From contig NIVC01004800.1 in NCBI GenBank assembly GCA_002269645.1, forward strand, positions 1 to 34,854: a stretch of DNA of 34,854 bases, written 5' to 3'. Shown in pieces: positions 3,097 through 31,411 of this stretch; the first letter of the stretch is position 1, and every line of letters starts with the position of its first letter. The notes under the pieces were generated by a model, which was not told the DNA's origin, made no database searches, and was given only the letters and a program-made list of their open reading frames with translations. Made by a program: the position numbers and the translations under genes. This DNA comes from Macrostomum lignano. Its lineage: Eukaryota.

Positions 3097-3410
3097 TAGA
3101 GATGTTCCAAAAAAGCATTTTATTTTTCTGTCAAAATCAAAATTTGCTAACTTTCCAAAATTGAAATTGAAATTTTCTGAAATCAATTTCAGAAAAACAA
3201 AGTTTAGTATGACCAACATTGACTTTTTTTACTTTTGATTTACTGTTTATACAAAACAAAATACATGTATAGATAGTAGAAATTAGTTTATTTTTAGCCA
3301 CTTTTTTAGACACCTCTAAAATTTTGACTTTTGAATTTTTTTAAATCAAAATTTGTTCCTAAAAATTCAAAATTTTGGAAAATCAAAATTGAAATTTTGG
3401 AACATCTCTA
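3097..3410. mobile_element. hAT-like MITE
   Basis: Perfect 16-bp TIRs TAGAGATGTTCCAAAA (3097-3112) and TTTTGGAACATCTCTA (3395-3410). Internal AAAATT/TCAAAATT subrepeats. Degenerate 8-bp flanks AGGATTAT/AGCATGAT (6/8). Confidence 0.65.
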
Positions 3411-3689
3411 AGCATGATAAATTACAAGTGTATAGGCCCCTTCCACAAAGGTATTAGACCCCCTTCCATGTCTATTTATTTGCTAGTGCAGCAGCCAGTA
3501 GGAAAGAGCAGCGCGTGCGCAAGTGCAGGCGCTATATGCCTAATGCTTGTGTTGCACTTTAGAAAATTTTCCTATCTAAGTAAGTTTTGCCTATAGGGGC
3601 GCAATTAGGGTAGGCATCCAGCATACCTAAGCCATGTATTGCAATAAGATCAGAAAGTGTTATATGAATCTAGTCAATTTCCTTTATTA

Positions 3690-5443
3690 CAAGGGGTGTC
3701 CAAAAAGTCTTAGGACTTTCTAGCATCACTCTTTTAATAGTCAGCAAGAGTAATAGCAACAGATTTATTTTATAGTGGCTTTACTTAAAAATAATGCAGT
3801 GAAAGAATTTTTAAAATACCACTAACTTTTCAAAAGTTATGCCTCCTTAACTGTAATGGGGTACTGCATCTCAATACATGAACAGGAACTTGGATGCTGC
3901 ATATGGAGCACTAGAAAATAGTAAGTCAGTTGTCTTTCAAAAATGTTCAAATGTATTCCTCAGTGGCAACTGAGACCTCAACATAGTCACCCTTCAGTTG
4001 GATGCATTTCTTCCACCAGGTAAGCATGTTATCAATGACATCTGCATACGCCTACCTTGGCATTTTGTGGACAAGAACCCATTGCACTTCCTGCTCAAGA
4101 ACAGTCATGGTTGGCATGAACTCTGCCCCTTAGAAGCTGCTTGAGTTTTGGAAAGATGGCAAAATCAGCTGGTATAGCAAATATGGTATATGAGGTAGGA
4201 GGTTGAATTGGATTTTGTTGTTTGCTTCGACCATCTTTTATGCAGTGTGGGGCTAAGCATTGTCATAATGGAGGAGCATTGGCTTTGTTGGAGTTCTCCG
4301 CTTGTTTGGGATATCCTTCTTCTGCTTCTTCAGCAAATTAATGTAATGGTCAGAATTGACAGTGGCATTTGGCTCCAGGAAGTCAATTGTCAGTGGCCTA
4401 TGACAGTCAAAAAAGAGCAACAGCATCACTTTCTGGCAATGGGTCTCACGTCAAGCCTTGGTGAAGGGATCAGTACCTTTCATTGTCCACACCTTAGACT
4501 CCTCCTTGGTCAAAGGGTCAAAGTGACCACCAGAGAATGGTAGATCCCCATCCTCCATGCTGATCAACCAGTGTCAGATTGCCTTGATAGGTCTGCTCTT
4601 GCTGCATCTTCATGTTAGGGGTGAGAATCCTCAGAACCCATCAAGCACTCAGTTTGATGAGATCCATGTTTTGCATGCAGAGATAGACAGTTGACTTTGG
4701 TATATCCAACTGGTCAGCAATCTCACAGATTGTCAATTGAGCATCAGTTTCAATGAGGTCTAGGATTTGATCTCCCAGAGTTTTGGAGGCAGATGCAGGA
4801 GATCATCCAGTTCTTGGCAAATCAGCCACATCTGTATGCCCAGCTTCAAACTCTTCAATCTAGCAGTACACTGTGCTCCTGGATACTGCTTCAGGCCCAT
4901 GAATTGTGCTCAGCTGTGTCAGAATTTCAGCACCATTCAACCTCATATGCCAAAGGGTATAGGCCAAGCAATGCTATGTTGTCTTTGAGTGGATATCCAT
5001 GATCCACAGATTGGGAAGAAATTTTGATAAACACTTGGCAACAAAGGCTTCAGCTGCATCTCAAAATGAGTCTCTTTCAAGGGCTGTTTTAGAGTGCAAT
5101 ACAAGTAGAAGCAAATGAAACTTTTACTCGTACCATAGATATAGAAAGACAGTGATGATATGGCATATGCTAAAGATTTTTTTGCACAAGTTTGAATTTT
5201 GTTAATTTCTATGAGATTTCAAAATTGTAGTTTAGTTCTAGTTCCTGTTCATGTATTAAGATGCAGTACCCCACTGCAATTAAGGAGGCATAACTTTTAC
5301 AAAAGAAAGTAGTATTTTCAAAATTCTTTCATTGTGTTATTTGTAAGTAAAGCCGCTTTGAAATAAATCAGTTGCTATTGCTCTTGCTAACTGCTAAAAA
5401 GAGTGATGTGAGAAAATCCTAAGACTTTTTGGATAACCCCCTG
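3690..5443 (-). mobile_element. Dead mariner (DD34D) transposon, copy 1
   Basis: TA dinucleotide on both sides. ~200-bp TIRs starting CAAGGGGTGTCCAAAAAGTCTTAGGA. Minus-strand transposase remnant: HFDPLTKEESKVW...HYDNA*PHTA*...LPHIPY..PADFAIFPKLK...WKKCIQLKGDYVE. Contains stops, a frameshift and an apparent deletion at the first catalytic D. Confidence 0.92.
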
Positions 5444-6769: not shown

Positions 6770-7943
6770 CAGTGTTGGGCAAGTTACTCAAAAAAAGTAA
6801 CTTGCGTTACTGTAACTTAAGTTACCACTTTTTAAAAAGTAACTTACATTAGCCTAGTAACTTTGAACAAAAACCCGGTAACTTTTAAGTTACTTCCGTT
6901 ACTTACTTCCGTTACCTATGTTATAAACAAAATTTTCTGCTTTTTTAACATTGCAAATGTGCTGGAACAGCACAAATGATCGCGAAAGCCAGAAGGAAAA
7001 ATACAACAAAATTAATTTCAGTAACTGTATTAAATTTTAATCACTTTAGGCCCTTTCCGTAAAAAGAAGAGAAGCTGAAGGTCAGAAATGTTAAAGGCAA
7101 AACGCAATTTAATTTTTAATAACATTATAAGTTATAATACACAAGGACAACTTAACGTAACTTCAGTTGTCCTTGATAATACATCGCTCGTAATAAGTAC
7201 CTGGCTTTACTCCACTCTACAGTCTGCTTTACTAGTCTTTTTATTTTCAATTATTTGAAATTTTTTTCAATTTTTTCAATTATTTTTCAATTCATTAATA
7301 TTAAATTATTGTGCAGTGCAGTGCAGTGCCAGTGGACTTTAGTGGTGTAGCCAGGGAGGCCGCCTTAACAATCGTTGGGGCGGCAACTTCACCCCACCTG
7401 CAAGACACCCCACCAGGGGGGGGGTGGGGTTGGGCGTGGCGGGTGCATGAGGCATGGCCAGCCAGGCCAACCCGCCCCCCCCCAATTAAAATTCCTGGCT
7501 ACGTCGATCACTGAGTGGATTTGTGGAGACTACAGATGAATTTCTTTCTTTGGTTGTTTGTTTCTAAGAACTAAACAAAATATTTTTATTAACTTAAAAA
7601 CGAAAAGCAAAAATATTTTACCAAAAATAACAAAGTAAAAACATGTTTCAAGTATTTCTTTATTAATTACAGCGTAATACCGTATAATATTATTCACTTA
7701 GTTTTGAATTTAAGAATGAAAAATGCTAAAAATGTGACAACTGGCGTAATAGCTAAGCATATCAGTTTTAAATTTAAATATTGCGATTGTTGCAAAGTAA
7801 CTGTAATGGACTTCCGAAATTTGAGTAACTTACCGTTACTCCGTTACCAAAATAGGAAAGTAACTTGCGTAAGGAACGCTTTACAAAAAAGTAACTTGCG
7901 TTACCATTTACAAGTTACTCGGTAACGGAAGTGCCCAACACTG
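6770..7943. mobile_element. hAT non-autonomous element (MITE)
   Basis: TIRs CAGTGTTGGGCA / TGCCCAACACTG. Perfect 8-bp TSD CTATTCAG (6762-6769, 7944-7951). Subterminal AGTAAC/GTTACT repeats at both ends. Confidence 0.92.
7340..7513. mobile_element. 174-bp mini-element of the CAGTGGCGTAGCCAGG-TIR family, nested in the hAT MITE
   Basis: Ends TAGTGGTGTAGCCAGG...CCTGGCTACGTCGATCACTG. Flanks AGTGGACTT / AGTGGATTT (8/9 direct repeat). Terminal parts match the ends of the 21912-23371 element. Confidence 0.75.
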
Positions 7944-8320: not shown

Positions 8321-10049
8321 TGATTGGTGTCCAAAAAGTAGTGGGACTTTTCAACATAGTTCATAGCTAGAGTCAGATACATAAATGGCATTGACATTTT
8401 ATGAAAGTGGCTTTATCTATCTATGCAATAAATTTTGAATTATGTTAATATCTACTAGAATTCAAAAGTTATGAGCAATTTAGTGCAGTTCCCCAGGGTT
8501 CAACTTATAGAAACTTTTAACAGGTAGTTGTAAAGCAAAGCATGGCAACAAATCTATCAGATGCAAGTCCTTTGAAAGTCTTCTTAACAACAAACTCAAA
8601 TGTCCTTCTCATTAGGGATAGAGACCTTCTCTATGTAGTCGCCTTTGCAGCTAATGCACCTCTCCCTAGCGAGTATGCAGTGAATCAATTGCATATGCAT
8701 ACTACTCCTTAGGAATTGCATAAACAAGGATGAATCAAACCTCTTCTTCAAGGCAATGGCAATTGGCATAGACTTTGCCTTGTAGCAGCTCCTTCAGTTT
8801 TGGAAAAAGATCAAAGTCGGCTGGTACCAAGTCAGGCAAGTAGGGTGGGTCGAGCTTCATGCCTTGAATTGCCTCCATTGTCCTCAAGGCCATGTGCAGT
8901 CAGGCATTGTCATGGTGGAGCACTGATGGTTTGATTCCACTGCACTGTTTATTGTGGATGTCAGCCTTGAGCTTCTTCAGAGACAAGATGTAGTGCTCTG
9001 CAATGACAGTTGTGTTTGGCTCTAGAAAGTTGATAGTCAGAGGGCCATGGCAATCAAATAAAAGCAGCAGCATCAGCTTCTGGCAATGAGCTTCTTGACA
9101 AGCTTTGATTGGAGGGTTGGAGCCCCTTATCGCCCAGACCTTTGACTCTTCTTTTGTTGTGGGGTTGAAGTGAGGCAGCCAGGTTTCGACACCTGTGACA
9201 ATGAGCTGTCAAAAGGCCTCCCACCTTCCTTGCTCTTCGACAAACCTGAGATTGCTCTTGCATTTGTTCTGTTGCTGTGCTTTCATTTCCAGGGTAAGAA
9301 GCCTCGGAACCCACGGCACTGAGCTTGACAAGATCCATGCTGCAGATGCAATGATGGACTATGGACTTTGGCATATCTAGTCTGTCAGCAATTTCCCTGA
9401 TGATAAGGCAAGCATTGTCTTCAAATAGGCCCAAAATTTGATTGCTCAGAGTCTTGGATGCAGATATCTTTAGCCAACCAGATTTTGGCAATGCCGCCAC
9501 ATTGGTTCAACCAGCTTCAAACTCTTCAATCCACCAGTAAACCATGCTCTTGCTTACTGCATGCTGTCCATGGATATGCTGCAGTTTATTTAAAATATCC
9601 AATCTATTGTGTCAAAGGCTCCATAGAGTAAAAATGGCATGGTGCTACCCTTCTTTTGAGTGGATGTCCAACATGTTAGCACAAACTTTGTTGCTTCAGA
9701 AGCGCAAGTTGACAAGATGTCTGGCTGAGCTGTGATGTCAATGTAAAGCTTAGTATCGCCTGGCTTTGATGATGCTGCATGTATTCATAGTTTTGGTGTT
9801 CAGTCCATAGACATGCATTACTATATCTGTAGGCATCATTGTATAAATTGTGTACATTTTCTGTAGGTTATTCCCTAGGGAACTACACTAAATTGCTCAT
9901 GACTTTTGAATGCCAGTAGATATTGACACAATTCAAAATGTATTGCATAGATAGATAAAGCCACTTTCATGAAATGTCAATGCCATTTATGTATCTGACT
10001 CTAGCTATGAACTACATTGAAAAGTCCCACTACTTTTGGACACCCCTTG
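8321..10049 (-). mobile_element. Dead mariner transposon, copy 2 (related subfamily)
   Basis: TA flanks (8319-8320, 10050-10051). TIRs 8321-8498 and 9873-10049. Remnant includes an HTH region (ORF 9054-9500), IVTGVETWLPHFNPTTKEESKVW, HHDNA*LHMA, PPYLPDLVPADFDLFPKLK and RCISCKGDYIEK. Confidence 0.92.
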
Positions 10050-11353
10050 TAATATGCTTTAATTTAAAAAGATATAAACAAAAGCTTTTAATTAGTATTG
10101 AAAAAGATATATTTTATATCTGTAATATATTTCTATTAACATAAACCATTTTTAAGCAACAAATTTTTTTTGCTAATAAAACTAAATCAACATTAAATAG
10201 ACAATTTTTGAAAATTGGACATTAATAACAGTCAGTTTGAGTATGTATGTAGTCTTTAAAACACCTTTAGAAGATGGCCTACACCACTGTATATGTTCAG
10301 TTTCTTAATTTGCAAAGCTTCAAGTATAGATCAGTTTAAAGAGTTTTTATGGTCTATAATGTTAACTAAATCAATTAGCTTACTCATTTAACACTTATCA
10401 TAACTGAGCAGGTGTTTATATATAGCTGAGTTTTTTAGCCACTTTTATTTGGCCCTGTTATATATACATCTTTTGTTTTCCCAACATAAAACCCTGTAAA
10501 AATAAGCTAGTACTATATCACTAATATAAGCATTTGCAAGCAAAATGCCAGCCAGTTATTCTTGCAGTTTGCCACAATTTTGCTAGGATTTAGTTACCTT
10601 TTAATTTTCTTTCTGAATGCAATTTTATTAATTTAATCTATAAAGCTTTTTTAAATGATCAATAGTATTATTTGTTGTATTGTATAAGCCTTGTATTTCT
10701 TTTTATATGAAGATTAAAACTCTATTAATATTTCTTTGTATGAAAAATAAAGCTTTAAAGAATAAATAAGACTGCTATTCTTTTTGAAGCTGAAAAAGAT
10801 CAGATTGTTTTTTTCTGAAATCAATCGCATACCTAGATAGATAGATACCAATAGACCATTTTTAGTATATGGACAAGCAAGATTTTCATTTTTACAAGCT
10901 AGTATATGGAAATGTTTTATTAATAAGCAGCCTTATATATGTATGTAAATATGAAAATATGACAAAATGCAATGTTATATGCTGAATTGGTATAAACCAT
11001 GTCACTATCAAACAACTTTGATATAATGTAGTTTAATGTTGAATAGTTAATTGTAATTCTGAAGACTGTTTAAGAGTGATTAAGGTTGTTTAGGACAATT
11101 TATAGACACTGGTTAAGCATATGCTGCACTGAAATGGAACTTAATAAATTGTACACAGTATGTATATTAAAAAATGTGCATTATTTGCAGAAAATACATG
11201 AATGAAAAATCCCTAAATGTCATCAAACTTTATGCAGTTTTTTTATTTTCCTAAGTGTTCTTATCATTTGCATTATCAGCACTGGTCTTATCATTACTTG
11301 ATATAATGGCTGCAATATGCTAGGAAGCCTGGCTAAGACAATCAGTGGAAGAG

Positions 11354-12298
11354 CTCACCTTACTGACTTTGAGAATCCTCACCTTACTCACTTTGAGAAT
11401 CCTCACCTTACTCACTTTGAGAATCCTCACCTTATCACTTTGAGAATCTTCACCTTACTCACTTTAAGAATCTTCACCTTACTCACTTTGAGAATCTTCA
11501 TCTTACCCACTTTGAGAATCCTCACTTGACTCACTTTGAGAAGCCTCACCTTACTCACTTTGAGAATCTTCACCTTACTCACTTTTAGAATCTTCACTTT
11601 AATCACTTTGAGAATCTTCATCTACTCACTTTGAGAATCCTCACCTTAATCACTTTGAGAATCTTCACCTTACTCACTTTAAGAATCTTCACCTTACTCA
11701 CTTTGAGAATCTTCACCTTACTCACTTTGAGAATCTTCATCTACCCACTTTGAGAATCCTCACTTGACTCACTTTGAGAAGCCTCACCTTACTCACTTTG
11801 ATAATCCTCACCTTACTCACTTTGAGAATCTTCACCTTACTCACTTTTAGAATCTTCACTTTAATCACTTTGAGAATCTTCATCTACCCACTTTGAGAAT
11901 CCTCACTTGACTCACTTTGAGAAGCCTCACCTTACTCACTTTGATAATCCTCACCTTACTCACTTTGAGAATCTTCACCTTACTCACTTTTAGAATCTTC
12001 GCTTTAATCACTTTGAGAATCTTCATCTACCCACTTTGAGAATCCTCACTTGACTCACTTTGAGAAGCCTCACCTTACTCACTTTGAGAATCCTCACCTT
12101 ACTCACTTTAAGAATCTTCACCTTACTCACTTAGCGAATCTTCACTTTAATCACTTTGAGAATCTTCATCTACCCACTTTGAGAATCCTCACTTGACTCA
12201 CTTTGAGAAGCCTCACCTTACTCACTTTGATAATCCTCACCTTACTCACTTTGAGAATCTTCACCTTACTCACTTTGAGAAGCCTCACCTTACTCACT
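11354..12298. repeat. 24-bp minisatellite (~39 units), consensus CTCACCTTACTCACTTTGAGAATC, with higher-order period
   Basis: Direct tandem units. The variant CATCTACCC recurs at 11738, 11881, 12024 and 12167 (143-bp period, 6 units). Confidence 0.97.
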
Positions 12299-12322
12299 GA
12301 GGTTCCAGGGGCTAAAAAACAG

Positions 12323-12819
12323 ATGAATTGCCAATTGATGAGCAGCAATCAGCGCCAGCTAACAGCCGGCATGGAGCGAGTGCGGCCCCGGCCACGCCTA
12401 GAACTGGCTGTCGGGGGCATCGGCCGGCCCTCAGTAGTCCTTGGCCAGCACAATCAGCACAATCAGCAGCAGCAGCAGCATCAACAGTTGATGCCGGCGG
12501 TTGGCAAGTTATTATTGCCGGACGACGCCACTGAGCGACAGTTTAGCGTTGACGATCTGGAAGATCTAGGCGAGATTGGCCGCGGCGCATTTGGCGCAGT
12601 GAACCGGATGCGCTACACCCCCACCGGAGTCGTGCTGGCCGTTAAACGGATCCGATCAACTGTAGACGAACGGCAGCAGAAGAATATGCTGCTAGAATTG
12701 AATGTAGTTGTCAATTGTCAATGCGAATTTATAGCCCGCTCATATGGCGCACTGTTTAAGGAAGGCGACTGCTGGATCTGCATGGAATTGATGGATACTA
12801 GTCTGGATAAGTTCTACAG
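12323..12819 (+). CDS. MAP2K4: MAP kinase kinase 4 (MKK4/SEK1), exon 1
   Basis: DDLEDLGEIGRGAFGAVN, AVKRIRSTVDERQQK, CWICMELMDTSLDKFY. Donor AG|GTTCGT at 12820. Start at ATG 12323 is assumed; ATG 12338 or an upstream exon is possible. Confidence 0.93.
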
Positions 12820-13127
12820 GTTCGTTTTTGTCCGAACAATTTTGCGCCTGTAATTGCCACAACGCACTAATCATAGTAATGAATGCTTCTCTCGCAAAAG
12901 TATGTTGACCCCACCCAAAGAGGCACGATGAGATGGTTAGAGTCGCTACATGTATAACGTGAGCGTGTGCCTGAGTACATATCCGCATGATTATTCTTGC
13001 CTGTGAATCGAATTGAAAGCCAAAGATGTCAGCTGGCATTAGTCAAATAAATTAAAAAAATCGAATAAAATATCAACATCGCTACCCTACCCTGTACATT
13101 TCTGAGCCTGTCTGACCTACAGAAGCT

Positions 13128-13436
13128 GCATAATAATAATAATTGGGCCAGATATATAACGGACAGTTCAGTAACATCTGAAGGCTGCATACGGCTGTTC
13201 AGTACAAGGACTGGGGGGAGGTCGCTACGCAACACCCTCATGTAGGGCTGCCGGCCCTACATGGCGCCAGAACGAATCGATCATCATCCCAGCTCATGCT
13301 GGCACCCATTTTACAGCTGCGTGAACTGAAGCAATGCAGAGTTAAGTTGCTCAAGGGCCGGGATCGGTAATTGAACCCCCGACCTTCTAGTTGTGAGTCC
13401 TACGCTCAGACGGTCTTAACCGCTAGGCTACAACCC
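13128..13436 (-). mobile_element. tRNA-derived SINE in the MKK4 intron
   Basis: Minus-strand head GGGGTTGTAGCCTAGCGGTTAAGAC (A box) ... GGTTCAATTACC (B-box-like). Body CTGTAAAATGGGTGCCAGC. 3' end GTTATATATCTGGCCCAATTATTATTATTAT with a (TTA)n tail. Confidence 0.8.
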
Positions 13437-13859
13437 CCTCCTGCAGTAAGTCTGTAGACTCAATGTCTACAGATTACTTAAATTCGAAAATTGATAAAGT
13501 TTCAAAATCCCAAGAATACCAACCAATGATTATTACAATTATTTAAAGCTAAATTAACAAAATATGAAACTTAATTTAAATTATATCCAGTGCAGAGACT
13601 GGGTGCTAATTTTGTATCCGGAGTCCGAATTCAGGATGTCATGAAAGTGATGCTAATATGAGCAGACTGTATGATTGGTTTAGTATAGCATTCTTATTAA
13701 TAGACCTTTTGCCTAAGTGGAAAACTAAGTTGATTGAAACTTCTGAATTCTGTAGATTTACAGTTTGTTTTGTCTTCTATAAGTACATGATTCCAGATCA
13801 GTTAAATTACGTTTACTTACCTGTTACCTATAATTACAATTAACTACCACCACCTGCAG

Positions 13860-14502
13860 AATTGTCTACCACCATCTGCACGAGGCCATCCCGGAGGTTG
13901 TAATCGCTCGGATCGCTTTGGCAACAGTTTCGGCGCTGGACTATCTTAAAGAGAAGCTAGGCATGATGCACCGAGACGTGAAGCCCAGCAATATCCTGGC
14001 TGACAGGCGGGGCCGGGTGAAGCTGTGCGACTTCGGTATAGCCGGCAAGCTCGTTGACAGCATAGCCAAGACCCGCGACGCCGGCTGCCGGCCCTACATG
14101 GCGCCAGAACGAATCGATCATCAGCGCATGACCGAAGGCTACGACGTGCGCAGCGACGTCTGGTCGTTAGGCATCTCGTTGTACGAACTGTGCACCGGCC
14201 GCTTCCCCTATAGACAGTGGGGCACAATGTTTGAGCAGCTGGAACAGGTGGTGAAGAGCGATCCGCCTAGGCTAACCGATATTCGCTACTCCGAGGAGGC
14301 CCGCAGTTTTGCTAATCTCTGCCTAACTAAAGACGTCAAGAAGCGGCCAAAATACCGGCAATTGTTGCAGCATCCGTTCCTATTGGAGAGCGCCGCTCTC
14401 GACGCCGACGCCGATATTGCCGCCTACTTCTGCAGCGTGCTGAACCGGACGCCGGAGGAAGCCCAACTGGCTGACCTCCTGGCCGCTGTACACGTTGCTT
14501 AA
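13860..14502 (+). CDS. MAP2K4: MKK4 exon 2 (spliced protein 379 aa)
   Basis: Acceptor CTGCAG|A gives the in-frame join FYR-IVYHHL. HRDVKPSNIL and DFGIAGKLVDSIAKTRDAGCRPYMAPERID (the MKK4 activation loop). Stop TAA at 14500-14502. Confidence 0.96.
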
Positions 14503-16172: not shown

Positions 16173-17179
16173 ATGGCAGACCCATCTGGTGCCTCAGCCA
16201 ACACGGCAGCGACAGCTGGTAGTGCCTTCGTAGAAGGCATCGGCTCTGAGGTTGTCGTCTGCCTCTTCATCCTACTTGCTGGCCTAATCCTTGTTGCTGC
16301 TTGGCTATCAACGTACGTGCCGCAGGATATGCGACCTATTGCTGTGTTCGTGTTTGAAAATTTTGGCCGCTACAGACCTGGCGAGCAGCAGCAGCAACCG
16401 CAGCAGGTAGCGACCGCGCCGCTGCCTCCCGCAGCAATCACTGGTCCGGCTCCTATTCCAACAGCTGCTGCTGAAGCTCCGAGCGCTTCAACAGCAACAA
16501 CTGAAACTCCGTCTAGCAGTGCGTCGCCATCCTCTGACACTGCTCGCATCGCGACGCCACCCTCTGACAGTGCTCGCATCGCGACGGAGCCTGCGACAGT
16601 GCCAGACGCTGCAGCAGATGCTGGCGACACCACCGCCATTGATACTCCAGCTGCAGCCGCTGCGGTCACCACCGATCTGGCCGCCTATGATGTTGACGTG
16701 CTGGAATCAGACGGCGACCTTGACCCAGAGATGCGCGAACGCGTCGAGGACGTGCTTAACGAGTACACCCAGGTTATGGAGGCTAAGAACGATTCGGAAC
16801 TGCGAAATCGACGATTAAAGTATTTTAATTGTCTGCTGACCCAGCCGGCTGACTCTGATGCCAGCGCCAGCGTTGCCTCAACTTCTGGGGCTGGAACTGG
16901 CGCGGCCGCTTCTCCTGTCTCTGCATCTGATACTCCGGCATCAGCTGTTGTCGTTGGAAGCGAAGCTGCTTCATCATCGATCCTCGAGTCGTCTTCCGCG
17001 ATGCCGTCCGCAGCTCCTGCTGCCACCGTTGATACAGCGTCCGCCGCTGCGCCAACATCGTCGGCGACTGCATCTTCGAGCCGACCACCGGGCAGTCTGC
17101 TACTCAGATTGAAATACTTTAACGACGATCTGCGCACGGTTGTAGCCCTGCCCAACGAGTCTATTGCAAATTTTAAACG
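16173..17179 (+). CDS. TMUB: Transmembrane and ubiquitin-like domain protein (TMUB1/2 family), exon 1
   Basis: N-terminal EGIGSEV...LILVAAWLST TM segment, long A/S/T/P linker, UBL start LLLRLKYFND. Donor CG|GTTAGT at 17180. Confidence 0.88.
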
Positions 17180-17423
17180 GTTAGTCGCTAGTTGGTGATG
17201 TTTTGGATTGATGTTTGATTTTTAGGAGTTTACATTAAGGTACGATGTACTAATGACCTAGGTATTATTCCGTTGAAAATATGCTTTCTGATAGCAACAA
17301 TTTGAGTACTTGTTCCTTGCTTAAAACACTTGTCTGCATGAAATCGGATATCGTTCCTGTCATCCTAAAGATCCTGCAATATGAAAATAATATATTTAAT
17401 AACACCTATATATCCCATTCCAG

Positions 17424-17919
17424 GAAGCACTTCCAAGTAGAAATGTCGCGCAATATGAACATTCGTCTCATCTACAACGGTCGCGAGCTCAAAGAGGGCA
17501 CAGATTGTACCTTGGCCAGCTACGCCATACCCGAGGAGGCCACCATTCATTGTCTCATCACCGAACGAAATACGAGTGCCAACGAGGAGTCCGGAGCTGC
17601 TGCTGCCTCTGGTGGTGGCGGCGGTGCAGCAGAAGGCGACGGCGTCGGACCATTGGAAGGTCAGGGCGACATTGGTAGCTACATGTTTCCACTATTTGGC
17701 GGCATCCTTGGTATTATCTGGTACTGTCGGGTCTGCTACAAAGCCTATTTTAACTTCATGTCAACTATGGCACTTGGCGCCGTTACCCTACTGTTTTTTG
17801 CTGCCTTCTTCGCCTCCTGGTCGGCTCGGCCGGCCAGGCAAACTGGTCAAATACACGTGCATAGAATTAACCTGGACGCGCAGCAGCAGCAGCAGCAGCA
17901 GCAAGACCAACAAGCGTAA
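17424..17919 (+). CDS. TMUB: TMUB exon 2 (spliced protein 500 aa)
   Basis: Acceptor TTCCAG|G gives FKR-KHF. UBL IRLIYNGREL...IHCLIT, then two C-terminal TM helices (MFPLFGGILGIIWY; STMALGAVTLLFFAAFF), polyQ and TAA. Confidence 0.9.
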
Positions 17920-20767: not shown

Positions 20768-21103
20768 ATGCGAACCAAGCAGTGCGCGATTCGGCGCGTG
20801 GCAAACAGTGAGGAGGAAGACAATACTGAGGCAACGTTAGTTGCGCCTCAGTTGCCTGAGCCACTGTCGCAGCCCCAAACGCCTACTCTGACTACTACTA
20901 TAATTAATGGTCAAGGCCAGCAGCAATTGGAGGACGGCACTGTGGTTGTGCAACCGGAAGCCGTTGCTGAGACTGGCAATAGCCAAGTTGCCTGCTTCGA
21001 TCAGGCCTCGTCCGGTGCTCGATGCGCCGCGCCAGGAATTTACGACACCGTTAAGTGCACCGCTTGTGGAAAGAAAGTCAATCCTTACAATGGCACTATG
21101 GAT
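20768..21103 (+). CDS. ATRX-type ADD-domain protein, exon 1
   Basis: ORF from ATG 20768 ending VKCTACGKKVNPYNGTMD. Donor GTAAGT at 21104, phase 0. Confidence 0.85.
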
Positions 21104-21201
21104 GTAAGTGTGCAATAATTTTTTTTTCACTTTAAAACTGTTATCTACTACTTAGTGAATATGAATACTACTCAAAAGTTTGTTTTTCCATCTTCATTCA
21201 G

Positions 21202-21522
21202 GTGCATCCGCTACTAAAAGTGCTGGTGTGCCAGAAATGCTATAAATTCTACGCGTCTGGCCACTTCGACTCGGACGAGCAGGGCAAAGAGAACCAGTGT
21301 CGCTGGTGCGGCGAAGGCGGCTCATTAATCTGCTGCGACAATTGCGAGCATTCATTCTGCCGCACTTGTATTAAACGCAATCTTGGTCGCAGCGCTCTGC
21401 AGGATATTGAAAGCTTGCCGGACGAGTCTGTTTGGCTTTGCTACGCCTGCGATCAGAGCTCACTAAGGCACCTACAGGAGGAAGCCGTTGTTGTTATTAA
21501 AACTGTTAAAGAGCACTTTCTG
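21202..21522 (+). CDS. ATRX-type ADD-domain protein, exon 2 (GATA-like plus PHD fingers)
   Basis: HPLLKVLVCQKC...QCRWCGEGGSLICCDNCEHSFCRTCIKRNLGR...WLCYAC matches the ATRX ADD pattern rather than the DNMT3 one. Acceptor TTCAG at 21201, donor GTACGT at 21523. Confidence 0.93.
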
Positions 21523-21984
21523 GTACGTTGTATTTCTTCTAGAAGCTCGGGGACAAAAAGGGGAGCGAGGGGAGGGCGGCGAGTAGACAGGAATAGAAGG
21601 GCTCGAATGAGGTAGACAGGAATGGGAAGCAAAGACGGGAAGTCTAGTTTTCTCAAACGTGCTGAAAATACGAGAGATTTAGGCTCAGCTGGAGATATGC
21701 GCACAGTATTGCTCGCGCAACAAATTGGAAAACTTGCATCACCCTCCTCTAAACCCCAGCCCAGTCATTCTCCTCAGTATATGTCAGTTGATTGCCGTGT
21801 GAACGATTGCCAGATGGGCTAGACTAGATGGGAGACGGAAAGGGTTAGACTAGATGGAAAGGTTGGACTAGATAGGAGGCAAACAGGAAGGGAGAGTCGG
21901 AGACCCGAAAGCAGTGGCATAGCCAGGGGGGCCCAATCGCCTAGGGGGGTGGGGTTGGGCGCGGCGGGTACCAAAAACGGGTCG

Positions 21985-22814
21985 CCATCATAAGCTCGAA
22001 AAATCACATCGTCGAAACAGGGCTCCATCACAAGCTCGAAAAGTCATAAGCTCGAAAAATCACATCGTCGAAAACTGAATTAGCAGCGGGGGCCATCACA
22101 AGCTCGAAAAATCACATCGTCGAAAAGCATCCACCATCACAAGCTCGAAAAGTCATTAGCTCGAAAAGTCACATCGTCGAAAAGTTTAGCAACCACCATC
22201 ACAAGCTCAAAAAGTCATAAGCTCGAAAAGTCACATCGTCGAAAAGTTTAGCAACCACCATCACAAGCTCGAAAAATCACATCGTCGAAAAGTTTAGCAA
22301 CCACCATCACAAGCTCGAAAAGTCACATCGTCGAAAAGTCTAGCAACCACCATCACAAGCTCGAAAACTCACAAGCTCGAAAAATCACATCGTCGAAAAG
22401 TTTAGCAACCACCATCACAAGCTCGAAAAGTCATAAGCTCGAAAAGTCACATCGTCGAAAAGTCTAGCAACCACCATCACAAGCTCGAAAACTCACAAGC
22501 TCGAAAAATCACATCGTCGAAAAGTTTAGCAACCACCATCACAAGCTCGAAAAGTCATAAGCTCGAAAAGTCACATCGTCGAAAAGTCTAGCAACCACCA
22601 TCACAAGCTCGAAAACTCACAAGCTCGAAAAATCACATCGTCGAAAAGTTTAGCAACCACCATCACAAGCTCGAAAAGTCATAAGCTCGAAAAGTCACAT
22701 CGTCGAAAACTGATTTAGAAACCACCATCACAAGCTCGACAAGTCATAAGCTCGAAAAATCACATCGTCGAAAAGCTTAGCAAACATCATCACAAGCTCG
22801 AAAAGGCACAAGCT
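21985..22814 (+). repeat. Modular satellite arm (AAGCTCGAAAA / CATCGTCGAAAA / TAGCAACCACC modules; ~62-bp unit, 124-bp higher order)
   Basis: Direct tandem modules. The variant GTCTAGCAAC occurs at 22338, 22462 and 22586. Confidence 0.95.
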
Positions 22815-22815
22815 C

Positions 22816-23001
22816 TAACCCTAACCCCAAGGCACTAACCCTAACCCTAAGGCACCAGTACCCTAGCCTAACCCTGAAACATAACCCTAACCCCAACCCT
22901 AACCTAACCCTAAACCCTAACCCTAAGGCACAAGTTCTAACCCCAACCCTAAACTTAACCCTAAGCCCTAACCCTAAGGCACAAGCTCTAACCCTAACCC
23001 T
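22816..23001 (-). repeat. Degenerate interstitial telomere-like tract (TAACCC)n, i.e. (TTAGGG)n on the minus strand
   Basis: Many TAACCC units interrupted by AAGGCACAAGCTC segments. Confidence 0.9.
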
Positions 23002-23005
23002 ATTC

Positions 23006-23172
23006 AAGCTTGTGATGGTGGTTGCTAACCTTTTCGACGATGTGACTTTTCGAGCTTGTGATGGTGGTTGCTAAATTTTTCGACGATATGATTTTTCGAG
23101 CTTAGGACTTTTCGAGCTTGTGATGGTGGATGCTTTTCGACGATGTGATTTTTCGAGCTTGTGATGGCCCCC
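23006..23172 (-). repeat. Inverted copy of the modular satellite arm
   Basis: 23106-23172 is the exact reverse complement of 22088-22154 (67 bp). Confidence 0.93.
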
Positions 23173-23191
23173 CAAAAACCATGAGGCAATT

Positions 23192-23297
23192 GAGTGCCTG
23201 CGGCGCCAAAATAAGTGCCTGCGGCGCGCTAAAGTGAGTGCCTGCGGCGCTAAAATGAGTGCCTGCGGCGCCAAAATGAGTGCCTGCGGCGCCAAAA
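23192..23297. repeat. Five ~21-bp units GAGTGCCTGCGGCGCCAAAAT inside the composite element
   Basis: Direct tandem copies. The reverse complement matches the core of the 29604-30524 satellite. Confidence 0.9.
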
Positions 23298-23481
23298 GTG
23301 GCAATGGCATAAGGCATGGCCAGCCAGGCCAAACCGCCACCCCCCAATTGAAATTCCTGGCTACGCCACTGAGAGGGACTGGCGGGAAGGGAAGAGAGGG
23401 GGGAAACATATAGAGCTCTGCAATGATTTCCTTTCAATTAAATACTATACTAACTAATCCTATTTGCTTTAACGCTTTCAG

Positions 23482-25101
23482 GAGGCAAGCAAACGCTCTG
23501 AGAAGCAGAAAGTGGCCCAAGCAAAGAAAACGGTTGCCGCACCTGCTCCTCCTAACTCGGCGCCACTGCAGCTGCAGCCTCTGCCACTGCCCCAGCTGCA
23601 GACGATCCGTCAGGACCAGCTGCCAGTTCTAGTCGCTGCAACTCCAGCAATCGCCTACGGCAGCGTTCGCGGCGGAGTTGGCGTTACTAGCAACGCCACC
23701 ATTGCTGGCATGCAGCTGGATTTGAGTTCGGTGCCAAAAGTCACTTCTAGGATGCCGTATACTACTGTAGGTAATCAGCCTCTGCAACCGCATCGGCAGT
23801 TGACCCAGCAGCACAATCAGGTTGGCTCGCAGCTGCACAATCGTCATCAATTGCAGCAATTGCAACAGATGCAGCAACAGCAACGGCGGCAGCAGCAGCC
23901 GCAGCAGGTAGCGGCGCCAGCAGCAGCTGCCGGCCAAGCTAGTGTAACCCAGCGCACCGAGCTGTGGTACAAGCAGAATGTTCGCATAGAGACAATCCTA
24001 TCCGACATCGAATCCGTTGACGTGCGCAATATTGGCACAGCGCTTAATGCCACAGTGTCCCTATTGCAGGGTATGATGCGCCAATACAGCCGGTTCATGC
24101 AGGATCTCACTGCCGCCACTACTCTTGCAGACAAGTCGCAGATTGTATCCCGATTTAAAAGCGCCTACCGGATGCACCTGTTCCTACGGCTTGGCAAACT
24201 GCGCAGCCTTATCGCCGAGGAGGATAAGCACGCCCAGCGCAGGAGTGGCAAAACCAGAGGATCCGTGATCGATTTAACTGGGCCTTCGGCTGCGACCGTT
24301 TCGCGACCCGTGCACCAGCCAGGTCTGCGGATTCCGCAGTCTCGGCCGGCGCCTCCTGCACAGCCTATTATTCATCAGTCAGCAGGGCCGGTCGTGTCGC
24401 GCCATCAGCAGCAGCAGCAGCAAGCGCAGCAACGTCGCAGCATTCAGGCGCAGCGCCAAGCTCCGTGTCCAACACCCGAGAGGCCAGCAGCGGTGCCTCC
24501 CGATATGGTTGTCGTGCTGAGCGACGATGATGACGATGAGGAGAACAATAATAACGGCGGTGTCAGACACGACGGCGCTGTTGAGTCATCGGACAAAGAG
24601 GCCCAGCAGCAGTCTGAGGAGGCGCCCGCGTCGGTTGCTCCACCAGTGACTGGCGGCGGCAAGCCTGCAGCCATTCTTGAACTGCTTGAGGCGCGCAAAC
24701 GGCGTGAAAAATGCGCCAGAAAGCTGCAACAGCCACGTCGAATTCCTGCCGCCGAGGCCGAATCTTCTGCAGCCTCGGCGGCGTCGCCATCGATAGATTC
24801 GGCTGCCGACGAAGTGACTACGGCGAACGGCGACACTAATAGCAACGAAGCTGACGCTGTGCAGGAAGACACGTCGCCTCCTGATCCTGACCAGACTGCC
24901 AGCGCCGTGAAACGACGAATCGCGTCTGCAGACGAGGCCGAAGCCGCTATGGAAGATGCCGCAGGGATTGGAGATGGGGACTGGTCAGATTCGGGACCGC
25001 CAAGCGAGAAGCGGCCGCGGAATCAGCTTCAAGAGATCAATACGGAACCGGCGCATGACGTTGCGACAGCATCGGCAGCCGCAGGGAGTTCAGCCGCTTG
25101 A
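23482..25101 (+). CDS. ADD-domain protein exon 3 (Q/P/A-rich, helical segment, SIM-like motifs; spliced protein 758 aa)
   Basis: Acceptor TTTCAG|GAG is in frame with exon 2 and with the 529-aa ORF. Motifs VIDLT and VVVLSDDDDDEE. Stop TGA at 25099-25101. No helicase motifs. Confidence 0.8.
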   Translation, partial: EASKRSEKQKVAQAKKTVAAPAPPNSAPLQLQPLPLPQLQTIRQDQLPVLVAATPAIAYGSVRGGVGVTSNATIAGMQLDLSSVPKVTSRMPYTTVGNQPLQPHRQLTQQHNQVGSQLHNRHQLQQLQQMQQQQRRQQQPQQVAAPAAAAGQASVTQRTELWYKQNVRIETILSDIESVDVRNIGTALNATVSLLQGMMRQYSRFMQDLTAATTLADKSQIVSRFKSAYRMHLFLRLGKLRSLIAEEDKHAQRRSGKTRGSVIDLTGPSAATVSRPVHQPGLRIPQSRPAPPAQPIIHQSAGPVVSRHQQQQQQAQQRRSIQAQRQAPCPTPERPAAVPPDMVVVLSDDDDDEENNNNGGVRHDGAVESSDKEAQQQSEEAPASVAPPVTGGGKPAAILELLEARKRREKCARKLQQPRRIPAAEAESSAASAASPSIDSAADEVTTANGDTNSNEADAVQEDTSPPDPDQTASAVKRRIASADEAEAAMEDAAGIGDGDWSDSGPPSEKRPRNQLQEINTEPAHDVATASAAAGSSAA

Positions 25102-28695: not shown

Positions 28696-29436
28696 ATGGC
28701 TACGGGATCCTACGGCAAATATGGTAAAATACGCCATCAATCATTGGAACATTCCGCAGCTCCGCTGTGCAGCGCCATGCCAACTGGCGCGCGCACAGTG
28801 TCGGGCAGCGCCACTCCAAGTGGCGCTACTCCGCCGCCATCGGAGCAGTTGATCACGCTGACTCCACCGTCGCCGCTGCCCCAACGCTGCCACCTTCGCC
28901 GCCGCCACTGCTGCAGCCGCAGCAACAACAGCAGCACGCGCCATCCTCCGCCGCCACTGGTGCCAGCAGTCTGGAGTCGGCCGCCTCGCCGGACCTGTTC
29001 GAAGCCTGTCGAGCTGGCGACCTGGCTCGGGTCAAGCGGCTGCTAGCGATGGGTCACAGCGCCCTGGCTCGCGACCCAGCTGGCCAGGGCAGCACTCCGC
29101 TGCACTTCGCCTCCGGCTTCGGTCGACGCGACGTTGCCGCCGCCCTGCTGCAGAGCGGCGCTCCGGTTAACGCGCGCGACGAAGGCGGCCTGGTGCCGCT
29201 GCACAATGCCTGCTCATTTGGCCACTGCGACGTTGTCAATCTGCTGTTGGACTCCGGCGCCGATCCTAATCTGAAGGACAACTGGGGCTACACGCCGTTG
29301 CACGAGGCCGCCGCCAAGGGTAAACTGGAGGCCTGCCTGCTGCTGCTGCAGCGGAAAGCGGATCCGTCCGCTAGGAATGCCGAAGGTCGGACGCCGCTCG
29401 ACTTGGCCGAGGTTGAGGCCAGACAGGTGCTCACTG
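28696..29436 (+). CDS. TNKS: Tankyrase first coding exon (S/P-rich N-terminus plus first ankyrin repeat cluster); apparent 1-bp frameshift at 28879-28882
   Basis: [57 protein letters not shown], ending VLTG| with donor GTAAGC at 29437. The ATG at 28696 is in a different frame from the ankyrin ORF. Confidence 0.88.
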
Positions 29437-29603
29437 GTAAGCTTTTAGGAGACTAATCTACCTGCGGGGTGTTTTGTCATTTTTGGATAGGCGTTGGGAC
29501 ACCTTGCCTGGGTTGTGAAGCTCTAGTTGTGCTCAGTTGACAGAGCCAAGAATTCTGCATGAATAAATTCCTGGATTCTGTTTTGAGAAACGGTTTTATT
29601 TGA

Positions 29604-30524
29604 ACTCATTTTGGCGCCGCAGGCAGGGCACTCATTTTGGCGCCGCAGGCAGGCACTCATTTTGGCGCCGCAGGCAGGGAACTCAGTTTGGCGCCGCAGG
29701 CAGGGAACTCATTTTGGCGCCGCAGACAGGGCACTCATTTTGGCGCCGCAGACAGGGAACTTATTTTGGCGCCGCAGACAGGGCACTCATTTTGGCGCCG
29801 CAGGCAGAGCACTCACTCATTTTGGCGCCGCAGGCAGGGCACTCATTTTGGCGCCGCAGTCAGAGCACTCATTTTGGCGCCGCAGGCAGAGCACTCACTC
29901 TTTTTGGCGCCGCAGGCAGGGAACTCATTTTGGCGCCGCAGACAGGGCACTCATTTTGGCGCCGCAGACAGGGCACTCATTTTGGCGCCGCAGGCAGGGC
30001 ACTCATTTTGGCGCCGCAGGCAGAGCACTCACTCATTTTGGCGCCGCAGGCAGAGCACTCATTTTGGCGCCGCAGACAGGGCACTCTGGCGCCGCAGGCA
30101 GGCACTCATTTTGGCGCCGCAGGCAGGGCACTCACTTTGGCGCCGCAGACAGCGCACTCATTTTGGCGCCGCAGGCAGGGAACTCATTTTGGCGCCGCAG
30201 ACAGGGCACTCATTTTGGCGCCGCAGACAGGGAACTTATTTTGGCGCCGCAGACAGGGCACTCATTTTGGCGCCGCAGGCAGGGCACTCATTTTGGCGCC
30301 GCAGGCAGAGCACTCACTCATTTTGGCGCCGCAGGCAGGGCACTCATTTTGGCGCCGCAGGCAGAGCACTCATTTTGGCGCCGCAGGCAGAGCACTCACT
30401 CTTTTTGGCGCCGCAGGCAGGGCACTCATTTTGGCGCCGCAGGCAGAGCACTCATTTTGGCGCCGCAGACAGGGCACTCATTTTGGCGCCGCAGGCAGGG
30501 CACTCATTTTGGCGCCGCAGACAG
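29604..30524. repeat. GC-rich minisatellite, ~26-bp unit CATTTTGGCGCCGCAGGCAGGGCACT (~35 units) in the tankyrase intron
   Basis: Direct tandem units with an invariant TGGCGCCGCAG core and length variants. Confidence 0.97.
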
Positions 30525-31056
30525 TCGCTAACTAGCAAATTAGCAAAAAGTGCGACTATCAAATAATGCTTCTATAAGAAAAATAGTTGGCCTTGAAACA
30601 GTGAAGCACCGACAACACATTCTCTTTTGAGCCATGCATCCTAGCATCTCATCAGGCACTTATTTTAAACCAATTTCAAGTCATTCTGGAGATTTCTTAT
30701 TTTTTTAAAATGTTTAATTTCCGTTTTTATTTCGCATTTTTACTACTGATCAAATTAGTAGCTAGTGTGTAATCTTCCACTTATTTTAAACATACTTTCT
30801 CGTCTAATTTGTCTTAGTAATGCATCACTATTATTTGTATAGATAACGGAGTGGCCATACTTCCTGTGTTGAAGGGAGCAGAAATGGCTGGCTATACAGT
30901 AGTCACTTCCTGTCGTAGTCCGGTAATCATGTCCGGCTTTGTGTCACACGATACTCAGAAGACATGTTCTAAACTTGGACTGTCTTAGTTATCATGGAAT
31001 CAATTAGGCCAGTAGGAAGCTATGCATCTTGATAGATCTGATATCTGATGCATATC

Positions 31057-31352
31057 GCAGGCAGGCAGGCAGGCAGGCAGACAGACACAAGACAGACAGG
31101 CAGGAAGACAGACAGACAGACAGGCAGACAGGCAGGCAGACAGACACAAGACAGACAGACAGGCAGGCAGACAGGCAGGCAGACAGACACAAGACAGACA
31201 GACAGACAGGCAGGCAGACAGACACAAGACAGACAGACAGACAGACAGACACATAAAGACAGACAGACAGACAGACAGAAAGACAGACAGGCACATAGAC
31301 AGACAGACAGACACATAGACAGACAGACAGACAGGCAGGCAGGCAGGCAGGC

Positions 31353-31411
<59 letters not shown>

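What the first reader, a model, noticed from the sequence alone, without database searches (positions are those of the whole stretch)
13246..13286. Exact 41-bp copy of the downstream MKK4 exon (activation segment) embedded inside an intronic SINE
Seen: GGCTGCCGGCCCTACATGGCGCCAGAACGAATCGATCATCA at 13246-13286 is identical to 14083-14123 (codons GCRPYMAPERIDH), 837 bp downstream in the same orientation. It sits in the middle of a minus-strand tRNA-SINE. The exon peptide is the conserved MKK4 sequence, so transfer was exon -> SINE. A Pol III transcript of this SINE would carry 41 nt perfectly antisense to the host mRNA at the kinase P+1/APE region. Inference, in rising novelty: (a) assembly or read-correction graft; (b) one-off template switch onto nearby genomic DNA during TPRT or theta-mediated repair; (c) a SINE family with a variable cassette matching its host locus, acting as a cis-antisense regulator or a guide-like targeting sequence.
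Basis: partly seen in the sequence, partly recalled or inferred. Interest (0 to 1): 0.88.

Follow-up and report, generated by a model that had tools for sequence, protein, structure and literature searches.

The report
Repair scar: exon snippet copied into SINE
A 41-base piece of a flatworm MKK4 kinase exon has been copied, with a 7-base fold-back tail, into a SINE in the intron just upstream; it looks like a one-off scar of error-prone DNA repair or replication, not a regulatory device.

Summary
13246-13286 equals 14083-14123 exactly, on the same strand, and it is the longest dispersed exact repeat in the window. The host gene is an MKK4 orthologue of a Macrostomum-like flatworm under strong purifying selection. 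The copy went from exon to SINE.

The carrier is a genuine minus-strand tRNA-type SINE: tRNA-like head, conserved core, (ATT)n tail.

The insert is compound. The 7 nt to its left (CATGTAG, 13239-13245) are the reverse complement of CTACATG inside the insert. This gives a perfect 10-bp stem with a 5-nt loop. A direct patch plus a snap-back patch is the known signature of polymerase template switching.

An assembly artefact is unlikely but not excluded. Option (c), a SINE family with locus-matched cassettes, has no support. It could not be tested because no other copy of the family was reachable.

Two things were new:
- The 1,040-bp intron is lineage-specific. It is absent from both M. lignano paralogues, a limpet and a sawfly.
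- Its last 21 nt are an 18/21 near-duplicate of the first 21 nt of the next exon, so the 3' splice site was built from exon sequence.

Verdict: an ordinary mutational scar in an unusually young intron. Modest interest.

The parts
13246..13286 (+). 41-nt exact direct copy of exon sequence, the main templated patch, lying inside the SINE
   Evidence: D1; 0 matches in shuffles.
13239..13245 (+). 7 nt CATGTAG, the reverse complement of CTACATG at 13257-13263 inside the insert; inferred to be a second, inverted (snap-back or strand-switch) templated patch
   Evidence: Chance of a 7-nt extension of the stem exactly at the junction is roughly 1e-3 (own calculation: about 20 registers x 2 junctions x 4^-7).
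13239..13263 (.). Perfect hairpin straddling the left junction: stem CATGTAGGGC / GCCCTACATG (10 bp), loop TGCCG (5 nt)
   Evidence: -11.2 to -11.6 kcal/mol as ssDNA, z about -3.
14083..14123 (+). Source of the copy: MKK4 exon codons G-C-R-P-Y-M-A-P-E-R-I-D-H (activation segment, APE region)
   Evidence: M. lignano orthologous exons are 38/41 and 35/41 identical.
13130..13441 (-). tRNA-derived SINE. Head about 13441-13365. Conserved core ...CCTTGAGCAA..CATTGCTTCAGTTCACGCAGCTGTAAAATGGGTGCC about 13362-13301. Family-specific 3' region. (ATT)n tail 13144-13130. It is interrupted by the roughly 48-nt insert.
   Evidence: Head and core align with SINEs on metagenome contigs L006 and L009, and the core with L008 and L010 (alignment A1). 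ARAGORN and Rfam call no tRNA. The boundaries are approximate.
12820..13859 (+). GT..AG intron of the MKK4 gene, phase 2 inside the Arg codon of DKFYR|IVY; lineage-specific
   Evidence: Searches give the splice sites and frame. The position is uninterrupted in M. lignano L001-L004, Patella L012 and Orussus L013.
13838..13859 (+). Last 22 nt of the intron, AATTAACTACCACCACCTGCAG. Its first 21 nt match the first 21 nt of the next exon at 18/21. It supplies the 3' splice site (CTGCAG against exon CTGCAC).
   Evidence: D2; 0 of 2000 shuffles reach the score.
13860..13880 (+). Start of the last exon, AATTGTCTACCACCATCTGCA, the template of that near-duplicate
13446..13478 (.). Second hairpin of the same geometry just outside the SINE head: 9-bp perfect stem TCTGTAGAC / GTCTACAGA, 5-nt loop TCAAT, extendable to 14 bp with one bulge
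   Evidence: -10.5 kcal/mol, z -5.6, 0 of 200 shuffles.
12323..12819 (+). Upstream MKK4 coding exon. The start codon is provisional; the frame is open from 12203 and a further 5' exon is possible.
13860..14502 (+). Last MKK4 coding exon, including the stop codon. It corresponds to three M. lignano exons fused.

Best explanation
This is a one-off compound templated insertion of about 48 nt, left by a DNA polymerase that switched templates while a break or a stalled fork inside the intronic SINE was being repaired.

In the simplest order of events, read on the minus strand:
1. A 3' end in the SINE (...GCTGGGA) was extended on the + strand of the MKK4 exon 837 bp away. This copied 14123 back to 14083, 41 nt.
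2. The new end came off and folded back on itself. Its terminal GCC paired with GGC, leaving a 5-nt loop.
3. It was extended by 7 more nt (CTACATG).
4. It was then joined to the other SINE end (AGGGTGTTG...).

Read on the + strand, the same product is a 7-nt copy of one exon strand followed by a switch to the other strand.

The enzyme is most likely of the polymerase-theta end-joining or SD-MMEJ kind. A replicative template switch (FoSTeS or MMBIR type) is the alternative.

The event is very recent, with 0 of 41 differences. It sits in non-coding intron sequence and most likely has no function.

Shown: the exact copy, its direction from exon to SINE, the inverted 7-mer at the junction, and the SINE identity. 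Inferred: the order of steps, the polymerase, and neutrality.
For: - The 41-nt identity is exact, and the copies are the only two in the window.
- The source is a conserved coding exon. The same codons are present in both M. lignano paralogues at 38/41 and 35/41, and the peptide is conserved in Patella and Orussus. The gene is under purifying selection, with dN/dS about 0.06-0.1.
- The 7 nt abutting the insert are the reverse complement of a 7-mer inside it, in register with a 3-bp GGC/GCC pairing. Together they form a perfect 10-bp stem with a 5-nt loop. An inverted patch next to a direct patch is what reiterated priming with snap-back produces (PMC5068794, read; PMC4912351 and PMC2943611, listed).
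- The same intron carries a second, older exon-derived patch at its 3' end, 18/21 identical. A second hairpin with a 5-nt loop lies beside the SINE head.
- The window holds 7 distinct perfect hairpins (stem 9 bp or more, loop 3-8 nt; 9 rows as the script counts them) against about 1.4 in first-order Markov simulations counted the same way. This fits a background of template-switch mutation.
Against: - In C. elegans about 85% of POLQ templated inserts are primed within 10 bp of the break. They average about 10 bp, and only about 3% come from distant sites (PMC5068794). A 41-nt patch from 837 bp away is therefore at the unusual end of the range.
- The two outer junctions show no visible microhomology. 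This cannot be judged properly because the pre-insertion SINE sequence is unknown.
- If CATGTAGGGC is in fact the native SINE sequence, the compound reading falls. The 10-nt inverted match would then be a pre-existing microhomology or a coincidence.
- No reads, no second assembly and no population data were available.
Confidence: 0.68

Rival explanations
1. The template jump happened during the SINE's own retrotransposition (TPRT). The reverse transcriptase making the + strand cDNA left the SINE RNA, copied a few nt of one exon DNA strand and 41 nt of the other, then returned to the SINE RNA. The patch would then be as old as the insertion of this SINE copy.
For: - The insert lies cleanly inside an otherwise colinear SINE.
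- A hairpin of identical geometry, with a 5-nt loop, sits at the SINE 5' junction, where TPRT is completed.
- LINE reverse transcriptases are known to switch templates (own knowledge).
Against: - The orientation rules out a simple RNA-to-mRNA switch. The SINE-sense strand carries the antisense of the mRNA, so the template must have been the minus DNA strand or an antisense RNA (reasoned).
- It requires exposed single-stranded DNA more than 600 nt from the target nick.
- The flanking target-site duplication is not clear (41 of 1000 shuffles, gapped alignment).
- The age of the SINE copy relative to the patch cannot be measured without a family consensus.
Confidence: 0.13
2. It is an assembly, polishing or library artefact. 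The 48 nt are not in the animal's genome.
For: There is no independent assembly or read support. The window's species is not in any collection reached. Tiny worms are often sequenced from pooled or amplified DNA, and amplification polymerases also make template-switch chimeras (own knowledge).
Against: - A consensus assembly needs most reads to agree, whereas chimeras are single-molecule events.
- Exon reads would not be mis-placed into an unrelated SINE.
- Outside the tandem arrays, the window shows no other dispersed exact duplicate of comparable length.
- The same intron holds an independent, diverged exon-derived patch, which cannot be an assembly artefact of the same kind.
Confidence: 0.1
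3. The segment is a functional antisense or guide cassette. The SINE family carries a variable slot loaded with sequence from its host locus, and its Pol III transcript targets the MKK4 mRNA or feeds small-RNA pathways.
For: - On the SINE strand there is no TTTT run between the head and the insert, so a Pol III transcript would include the 41-nt antisense (read).
- Macrostomum has active PIWI/piRNA pathways (PMC4604429, title and abstract).
Against: - There is only one copy and no family data.
- The head is degenerate. ARAGORN and Rfam find no tRNA, and the B-box-like GGTTCAATTAC departs from the consensus.
- The fold-back fine structure is what a repair polymerase leaves, not what a designed slot would need.
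- The related SINEs found share only head and core, with nothing cassette-like.
Confidence: 0.03

Closest known systems
Polymerase-theta-mediated end joining / SD-MMEJ templated insertions (delins, 'filler DNA')
   Same: - The insert is identical to nearby sequence.
- More than one patch is present, implying reiterated priming.
- One patch is direct and one is in reverse-complement (snap-back) configuration with a short loop.
- The internal switch uses a tiny 3-nt microhomology.
(PMC5068794; PMC4912351, PMC2943611 and PMC5728401.)
   Different: The template is 837 bp away and the patch is 41 nt. Typical experimental inserts are about 10 nt and primed within about 10 bp. Outer-junction microhomology cannot be scored. 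Polymerase dependence is untested.
Short-range replication template switches that create perfect hairpins (Loytynoja and Goldman four-point model)
   Same: A short inverted copy creates a perfect stem from nothing. The window shows an excess of perfect short hairpins. References: PMC5453318, PMC8794818 and PMC7954356.
   Different: That model explains the 7-nt inverted part only. It does not explain a 41-nt direct copy brought in from 837 bp downstream.
FoSTeS / MMBIR microhomology-mediated template switching
   Same: Serial switches between nearby templates, with both direct and inverted pieces (own knowledge).
   Different: It is usually invoked for kilobase-to-megabase rearrangements. Here the total is 48 nt.
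Neointrons formed by double-strand-break repair (Daphnia pulex)
   Same: The host intron is lineage-specific and carries exon-derived direct repeats. Neointrons there are enriched in internal repeats, which are read as repeated break repair (PMC4202315; PMC3020277 and PMC3443670).
   Different: [quoted passage not shown] Here a 21-nt copy lies in tandem with its template at the same end, and the intron contains a SINE.
tRNA-derived SINEs with a conserved central domain
   Same: tRNA-like head, core ...CATTGCTCCAGT..CAGCTGTAAAATGGGTACC, simple-repeat tail. From memory the core resembles the 'Deu'-type central domains of invertebrate SINEs; this was not tested against a repeat library.
   Different: The 3' half matches nothing retrieved. 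The family itself is undescribed as far as these tools reach.

Membership tests
tRNA-derived SINE | 5' tRNA-related head with internal Pol III A and B boxes | tested here: inconclusive
   The head aligns with the heads of SINEs on L006 and L009. It has A-box-like TAGCCTAGCGG and B-box-like GGTTCAATTAC (read). ARAGORN and Rfam do not call a tRNA.
tRNA-derived SINE | Conserved central core shared across families | tested here: met
   The core 19-mer CAGCTGTAAAATGGGTRCC was the search pattern. Around it, 36 nt match at 86-89% on L006 and L009, which have the same head-then-core layout; L008 and L010 match over 19-23 nt.
tRNA-derived SINE | Many dispersed copies flanked by target-site duplications | tested here: inconclusive
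   There is no second copy in the 34.9-kb window, in about 90 kb of M. lignano, or in the collection scans. The flank alignment is weak (41/1000). The source genome was not available.
Pol-theta / SD-MMEJ templated insertion | Insert identical to sequence near the junction | tested here: met
   41/41 identity to sequence 837 bp downstream, plus 7/7 inverted identity to the insert itself.
Pol-theta / SD-MMEJ templated insertion | Reiterated priming: several patches, direct and snap-back | tested here: met
   A direct 41-nt patch abuts an inverted 7-nt patch, in register with a 3-bp GGC/GCC primer pairing and a 5-nt loop.
Pol-theta / SD-MMEJ templated insertion | Template within a few to tens of bp of the break; insert about 10 nt | tested here: not met
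   The template is 837 bp away and the insert is 41 nt. The norms come from PMC5068794, which also reports about 3% distant templates.
Pol-theta / SD-MMEJ templated insertion | Microhomology of at least 1 nt at the outer junctions, and dependence on POLQ | not testable with these tools
   The pre-insertion SINE sequence is unknown, and no genetics are available.
Neointron by break repair | Intron present in one lineage and absent at the orthologous position in relatives and outgroups | tested here: met
   DKFYR|(I/V)VY is uninterrupted in M. lignano L001-L003 and L004, Patella L012 and Orussus L013.
Neointron by break repair | [quoted passage not shown] | tested here: not met
   Only the intron 3' end against the start of the following exon is significant, and these lie in tandem at the same end. 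No terminal inverted repeats were found.
   No other family copy and no expression data were reachable.

The most novel reading that the evidence does not exclude
This MKK4 intron is a young, still-growing neointron that repeatedly acquires patches copied from its own host exons through error-prone break repair. The newest patch happens to place a perfect 41-nt antisense of the kinase's activation-segment codons into a Pol III-type SINE. That SINE's transcript, or small RNAs derived from it, could then act in trans on the mature MKK4 mRNA. This would be an accidental first step towards a TE-borne antisense regulator.
Probability: 0.04. Interest if true: 0.75.

Novelty: new member of a known kind. 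Interest (0 to 1): 0.3.

Why it matters
It is a clean natural example of a long-range, two-step templated insertion: a direct patch plus a snap-back patch. Such scars are well known from experimental break repair but are rarely documented this legibly in a wild genome.

Its setting adds value. The host intron appears to have been gained in this flatworm lineage, and its 3' splice site is made from a duplicated piece of exon. The locus therefore records several rounds of error-prone repair, first building an intron and then modifying it. This bears on how new introns arise in animals.

It does not, on present evidence, reveal a new regulatory or targeting system.

Tried and rejected
1. Finding other copies of the SINE family to define the 'slot'. 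All of these failed:
- BLAST of the element against the window and against four M. lignano loci.
- Core-motif scans of viral contigs (none) and metagenome contigs. The latter gave 7 hits: four SINEs of other families (two sharing head and core, two the core only), and three hits with no SINE head, two of them in what reads as coding sequence.
- 3'-region scans of genome contigs (none) and viral contigs. The 5 viral hits were bare 16-mer chance matches.

2. Retrieving the same locus from another assembly. The window's proteins are not on record, and a spliced model is not accepted by the look-up.

3. A protein search with a translated SINE. I considered this and dropped it. All frames are broken by stops, and the absence of any MKK4 hit above 78% identity shows that the species and its close relatives are not in that collection.

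4. Chance similarity or a native SINE origin of the 41-mer. Rejected, because the sequence is conserved coding sequence in other species.

5. An RNA-level chimera of SINE RNA with MKK4 mRNA. Rejected on orientation.

6. The intron as a DNA-transposon 'introner'. No terminal inverted repeats were found and there is no other copy.

7. The Rogers tandem-duplication model for the intron. Rejected, because the intron 3' end resembles the start of the downstream exon, not the end of the upstream one.

8. The gene as a pseudogene broken by an insertion. Rejected, because the frame is intact and dN/dS is about 0.06-0.1.

9. Rfam. Only a sub-threshold mir-2778 match was found, on the SINE core (19 bits against a gathering score of 86).

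Full report
**1. The observation**

The 41-mer at 13246-13286 is identical to 14083-14123, on the same strand, 837 bp apart. There are no further copies even at 3 mismatches, and none appeared in 100 shuffles. The bases on either side differ, so the identity is exactly 41 nt. Outside the window's minisatellite arrays it is the longest dispersed exact direct repeat.

**2. The gene**

The downstream copy lies in an exon encoding ...DSIAKTRDAGCRPYMAPERIDHQ.... A spliced model of 379 aa finds MAP2K4 (MKK4) proteins throughout animals. The best hit is Macrostomum lignano at 78% identity. The window therefore comes from a Macrostomum-like flatworm that is not M. lignano.

Its proteins are not on record in the contig collection.

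Against the M. lignano copy on L003, dN/dS is about 0.06-0.1 with dS about 1.3. The gene is functional and the species are well diverged.

Downstream synteny is with M. lignano locus L004.

**3. Direction of transfer**

The M. lignano exons carry the same codons at 38/41 (L001-L003) and 35/41 (L004). The peptide is conserved in a limpet and a sawfly. The intronic copy matches its own species' exon perfectly. The sequence therefore went from exon to SINE, and recently.

**4. The carrier**

Read on the minus strand, 13441-13130 has four parts:
- a tRNA-like head;
- a core, ...CCTTGAGCAA..CATTGCTTCAGTTCACGCAGCTGTAAAATGGGTGCC;
- a roughly 110-nt unique 3' region;
- an (ATT)n tail.

A metagenome scan for the core 19-mer returned seven contigs. 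L006 and L009 match the window element over 36 nt around the core and share its head-then-core layout. L008 and L010 are also tRNA-headed SINEs but match only over 19-23 nt of the core. All four diverge completely 3' of the core.

It is therefore a real tRNA-type SINE of a family I could not find elsewhere. ARAGORN and Rfam call no tRNA. Only a sub-threshold mir-2778 match falls on the core.

No second copy exists in the window, in about 90 kb of M. lignano, or in the viral, genome or metagenome scans.

**5. Fine structure of the insert**

The 7 nt left of the 41-mer (CATGTAG, 13239-13245) are the reverse complement of CTACATG at 13257-13263, inside the insert. Together with GGC/GCC they form a perfect 10-bp stem with the 5-nt loop TGCCG. 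Folded as ssDNA it gives -11.2 to -11.6 kcal/mol.

A 7-nt stem extension exactly at the junction has a chance probability of about 1e-3. This is my own calculation: about 20 registers x 2 junctions x 4^-7.

The economical reading is that the scar is about 48 nt and compound. It has a 41-nt direct copy of the exon and a 7-nt inverted copy, made when the new 3' end folded back with a 3-bp primer pairing and a 5-nt loop. Read on the other strand, the equivalent is a switch between the two exon strands.

Direct and reverse-complement patches side by side, reiterated priming and minimal microhomology are the described hallmarks of polymerase-theta end joining and SD-MMEJ (PMC5068794, read; PMC4912351, PMC2943611 and PMC5728401). 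The inverted part also fits short replication template switches that create perfect hairpins (PMC5453318, PMC8794818).

The distance (837 bp) and length (41 nt) are atypical. In C. elegans about 85% of such inserts are primed within 10 bp, the mean length is about 10 bp, and about 3% are distant.

The outer junctions show no visible microhomology. This cannot be assessed properly without the pre-insertion sequence.

**6. Orientation logic**

The SINE-sense strand carries the antisense of the mRNA. A simple jump by a reverse transcriptase from SINE RNA to MKK4 mRNA is therefore excluded. The template was DNA, or an RNA read by a repair polymerase priming from the other end. A jump during TPRT onto exposed target DNA remains possible. 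I rank it second.

**7. Artefact?**

This cannot be excluded without reads. Several points argue against it:
- A consensus assembly should not fix a single-molecule chimera.
- Exon reads would not be placed in an unrelated SINE.
- The snap-back detail is the work of a polymerase, not of an assembler.
- The same intron has an independent, diverged exon-derived patch.

**8. Context: a young intron**

The intron 12820-13859 has GT..AG ends, is phase 2, and splits DKFYR|IVY. That position is uninterrupted in both M. lignano paralogues, in Patella vulgata and in Orussus abietinus.

Conversely, the window gene lacks two introns that both M. lignano paralogues have. One is at HR|DVKPS, which is also present in Patella and so is probably ancestral. 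The other is at EQV|VKS.

The first 21 of the intron's last 22 nt (AATTAACTACCACCACCTGCAG) match the first 21 nt of the next exon (AATTGTCTACCACCATCTGCA) at 18/21. None of 2000 shuffles reached that score. The acceptor CTGCAG is a copy of the exonic CTGCAC.

No terminal inverted repeats were found, there is no other copy of the intron sequence, and nothing is significant at the 5' end.

This looks like an intron gained through break repair, as in the Daphnia literature (PMC4202315; PMC3020277 and PMC3443670), but with a tandem exon repeat rather than an opposite-end one.

Three of 21 mismatches against 0 of 41 (hypergeometric p about 0.035, my calculation) suggests that the two patches differ in age or in copying fidelity.

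**9. Other scars**

A second hairpin with a 5-nt loop lies just outside the SINE head. Its stem is 9 bp, extendable to 14 bp with a bulge, at 13446-13478 (z -5.6).

The window holds 7 distinct perfect hairpins (stem 9 bp or more, loop 3-8 nt; 9 rows as the script counts them) against about 1.4 in Markov simulations counted the same way.

**10. Function**

There is no evidence for any. A Pol III transcript of this copy would include the 41-nt antisense, since no T4 run precedes it. However, the head is degenerate, expression is unknown, and an intronic antisense SINE is already complementary to the pre-mRNA. I give the regulator or guide reading about 3-4%.

**Verdict**

The best explanation is a one-off, recent, compound templated insertion from error-prone repair or replication, a new member of a known kind. 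It sits in a lineage-specific intron that itself bears repair scars. Interest is modest at 0.3. The intron-gain context is the more useful by-product.

Noticed in passing
window 12820-13859, with 13838-13880: The MKK4 intron that hosts the SINE is lineage-specific. It is absent in both M. lignano paralogues, Patella and Orussus. Its 3' splice site lies in an 18/21 tandem near-duplicate of the first 21 nt of the following exon. It is a candidate recent intron gain by break repair.
   Followed up: yes
window 13971/13973 and about 14245-14250, against L001-L004: The window gene lacks two introns that both M. lignano paralogues have: HR|DVKPS, which is also in Patella, and EQV|VKS. The L001-L003 copies have a further intron at FIA|RSYG that is absent in L004 and in the window. 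Intron turnover in this genus looks fast. The adjacent 3' losses would fit cDNA-mediated intron loss.
   Followed up: partly
window 13446-13478: A near-perfect 14-bp hairpin lies immediately outside the SINE head: 9-bp perfect core TCTGTAGAC / GTCTACAGA and 5-nt loop. The loop size is the same as in the hairpin at the exon-copy junction. CTACAGA also recurs in the other SINE flank (about 13112-13118), so it may be a target-site or snap-back scar of the SINE integration.
   Followed up: partly
window-wide, for example 2880-2901, 3173-3196, 6779-6805, 28807-28827, 34085-34106: There is an excess of short perfect hairpins (stem 9 bp or more, loop 3-8 nt): 7 distinct against about 1.4 in first-order Markov simulations.
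   Followed up: partly
window about 11300-12310: A large minisatellite (units such as CTCACTTTGAGAATCTTCACCTTA, with higher-order periods of 143 and 286 bp) runs right up to the first MKK4 coding exon and is open in frame with it.
   Followed up: no
window 29600-30570 (+) and 23070-23440 (-); also 22100-22700 and 31000-31510: Further tandem arrays are present. An array of roughly 26-bp units (ACTCATTTTGGCGCCGCAGGCAGGGC) appears at two places in opposite orientation. There is also a 124-bp-period array at 22150-22700 and a (CAGA)n-rich array near 31000-31500.
   Followed up: no
window 8334-10042 and about 3685-5418: Long inverted terminal repeats (43, 30 and 21 nt exact pieces) bracket about 1.7 kb that contains a 148-aa ORF (9054-9500, minus strand). 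This looks like a Tc1/mariner-type DNA transposon remnant. A second set of inverted matches spans 3685-5418, and one 21-mer (TATTACAAGGGGTGTCCAAAA) is shared between 3685 and 10039.
   Followed up: no
window 16173-17919, 20768-25101, 28767-29456, 31893-32915 (-): Neighbouring genes, judged by eye from the ORF translations:
- a ubiquitin-like-domain membrane protein;
- a protein with an ATRX/DNMT3-type ADD zinc finger, syntenic with M. lignano L004;
- an ankyrin-repeat (tankyrase-like) exon;
- a 340-aa single-exon ORF starting MGQQMS.
None was examined further.
   Followed up: no
window 13288-13360 (-): The SINE core gives a sub-threshold Rfam match to the insect mir-2778 precursor family (19 bits against a gathering score of 86). 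It probably reflects a SINE-core origin of that miRNA family rather than a miRNA here.
   Followed up: no
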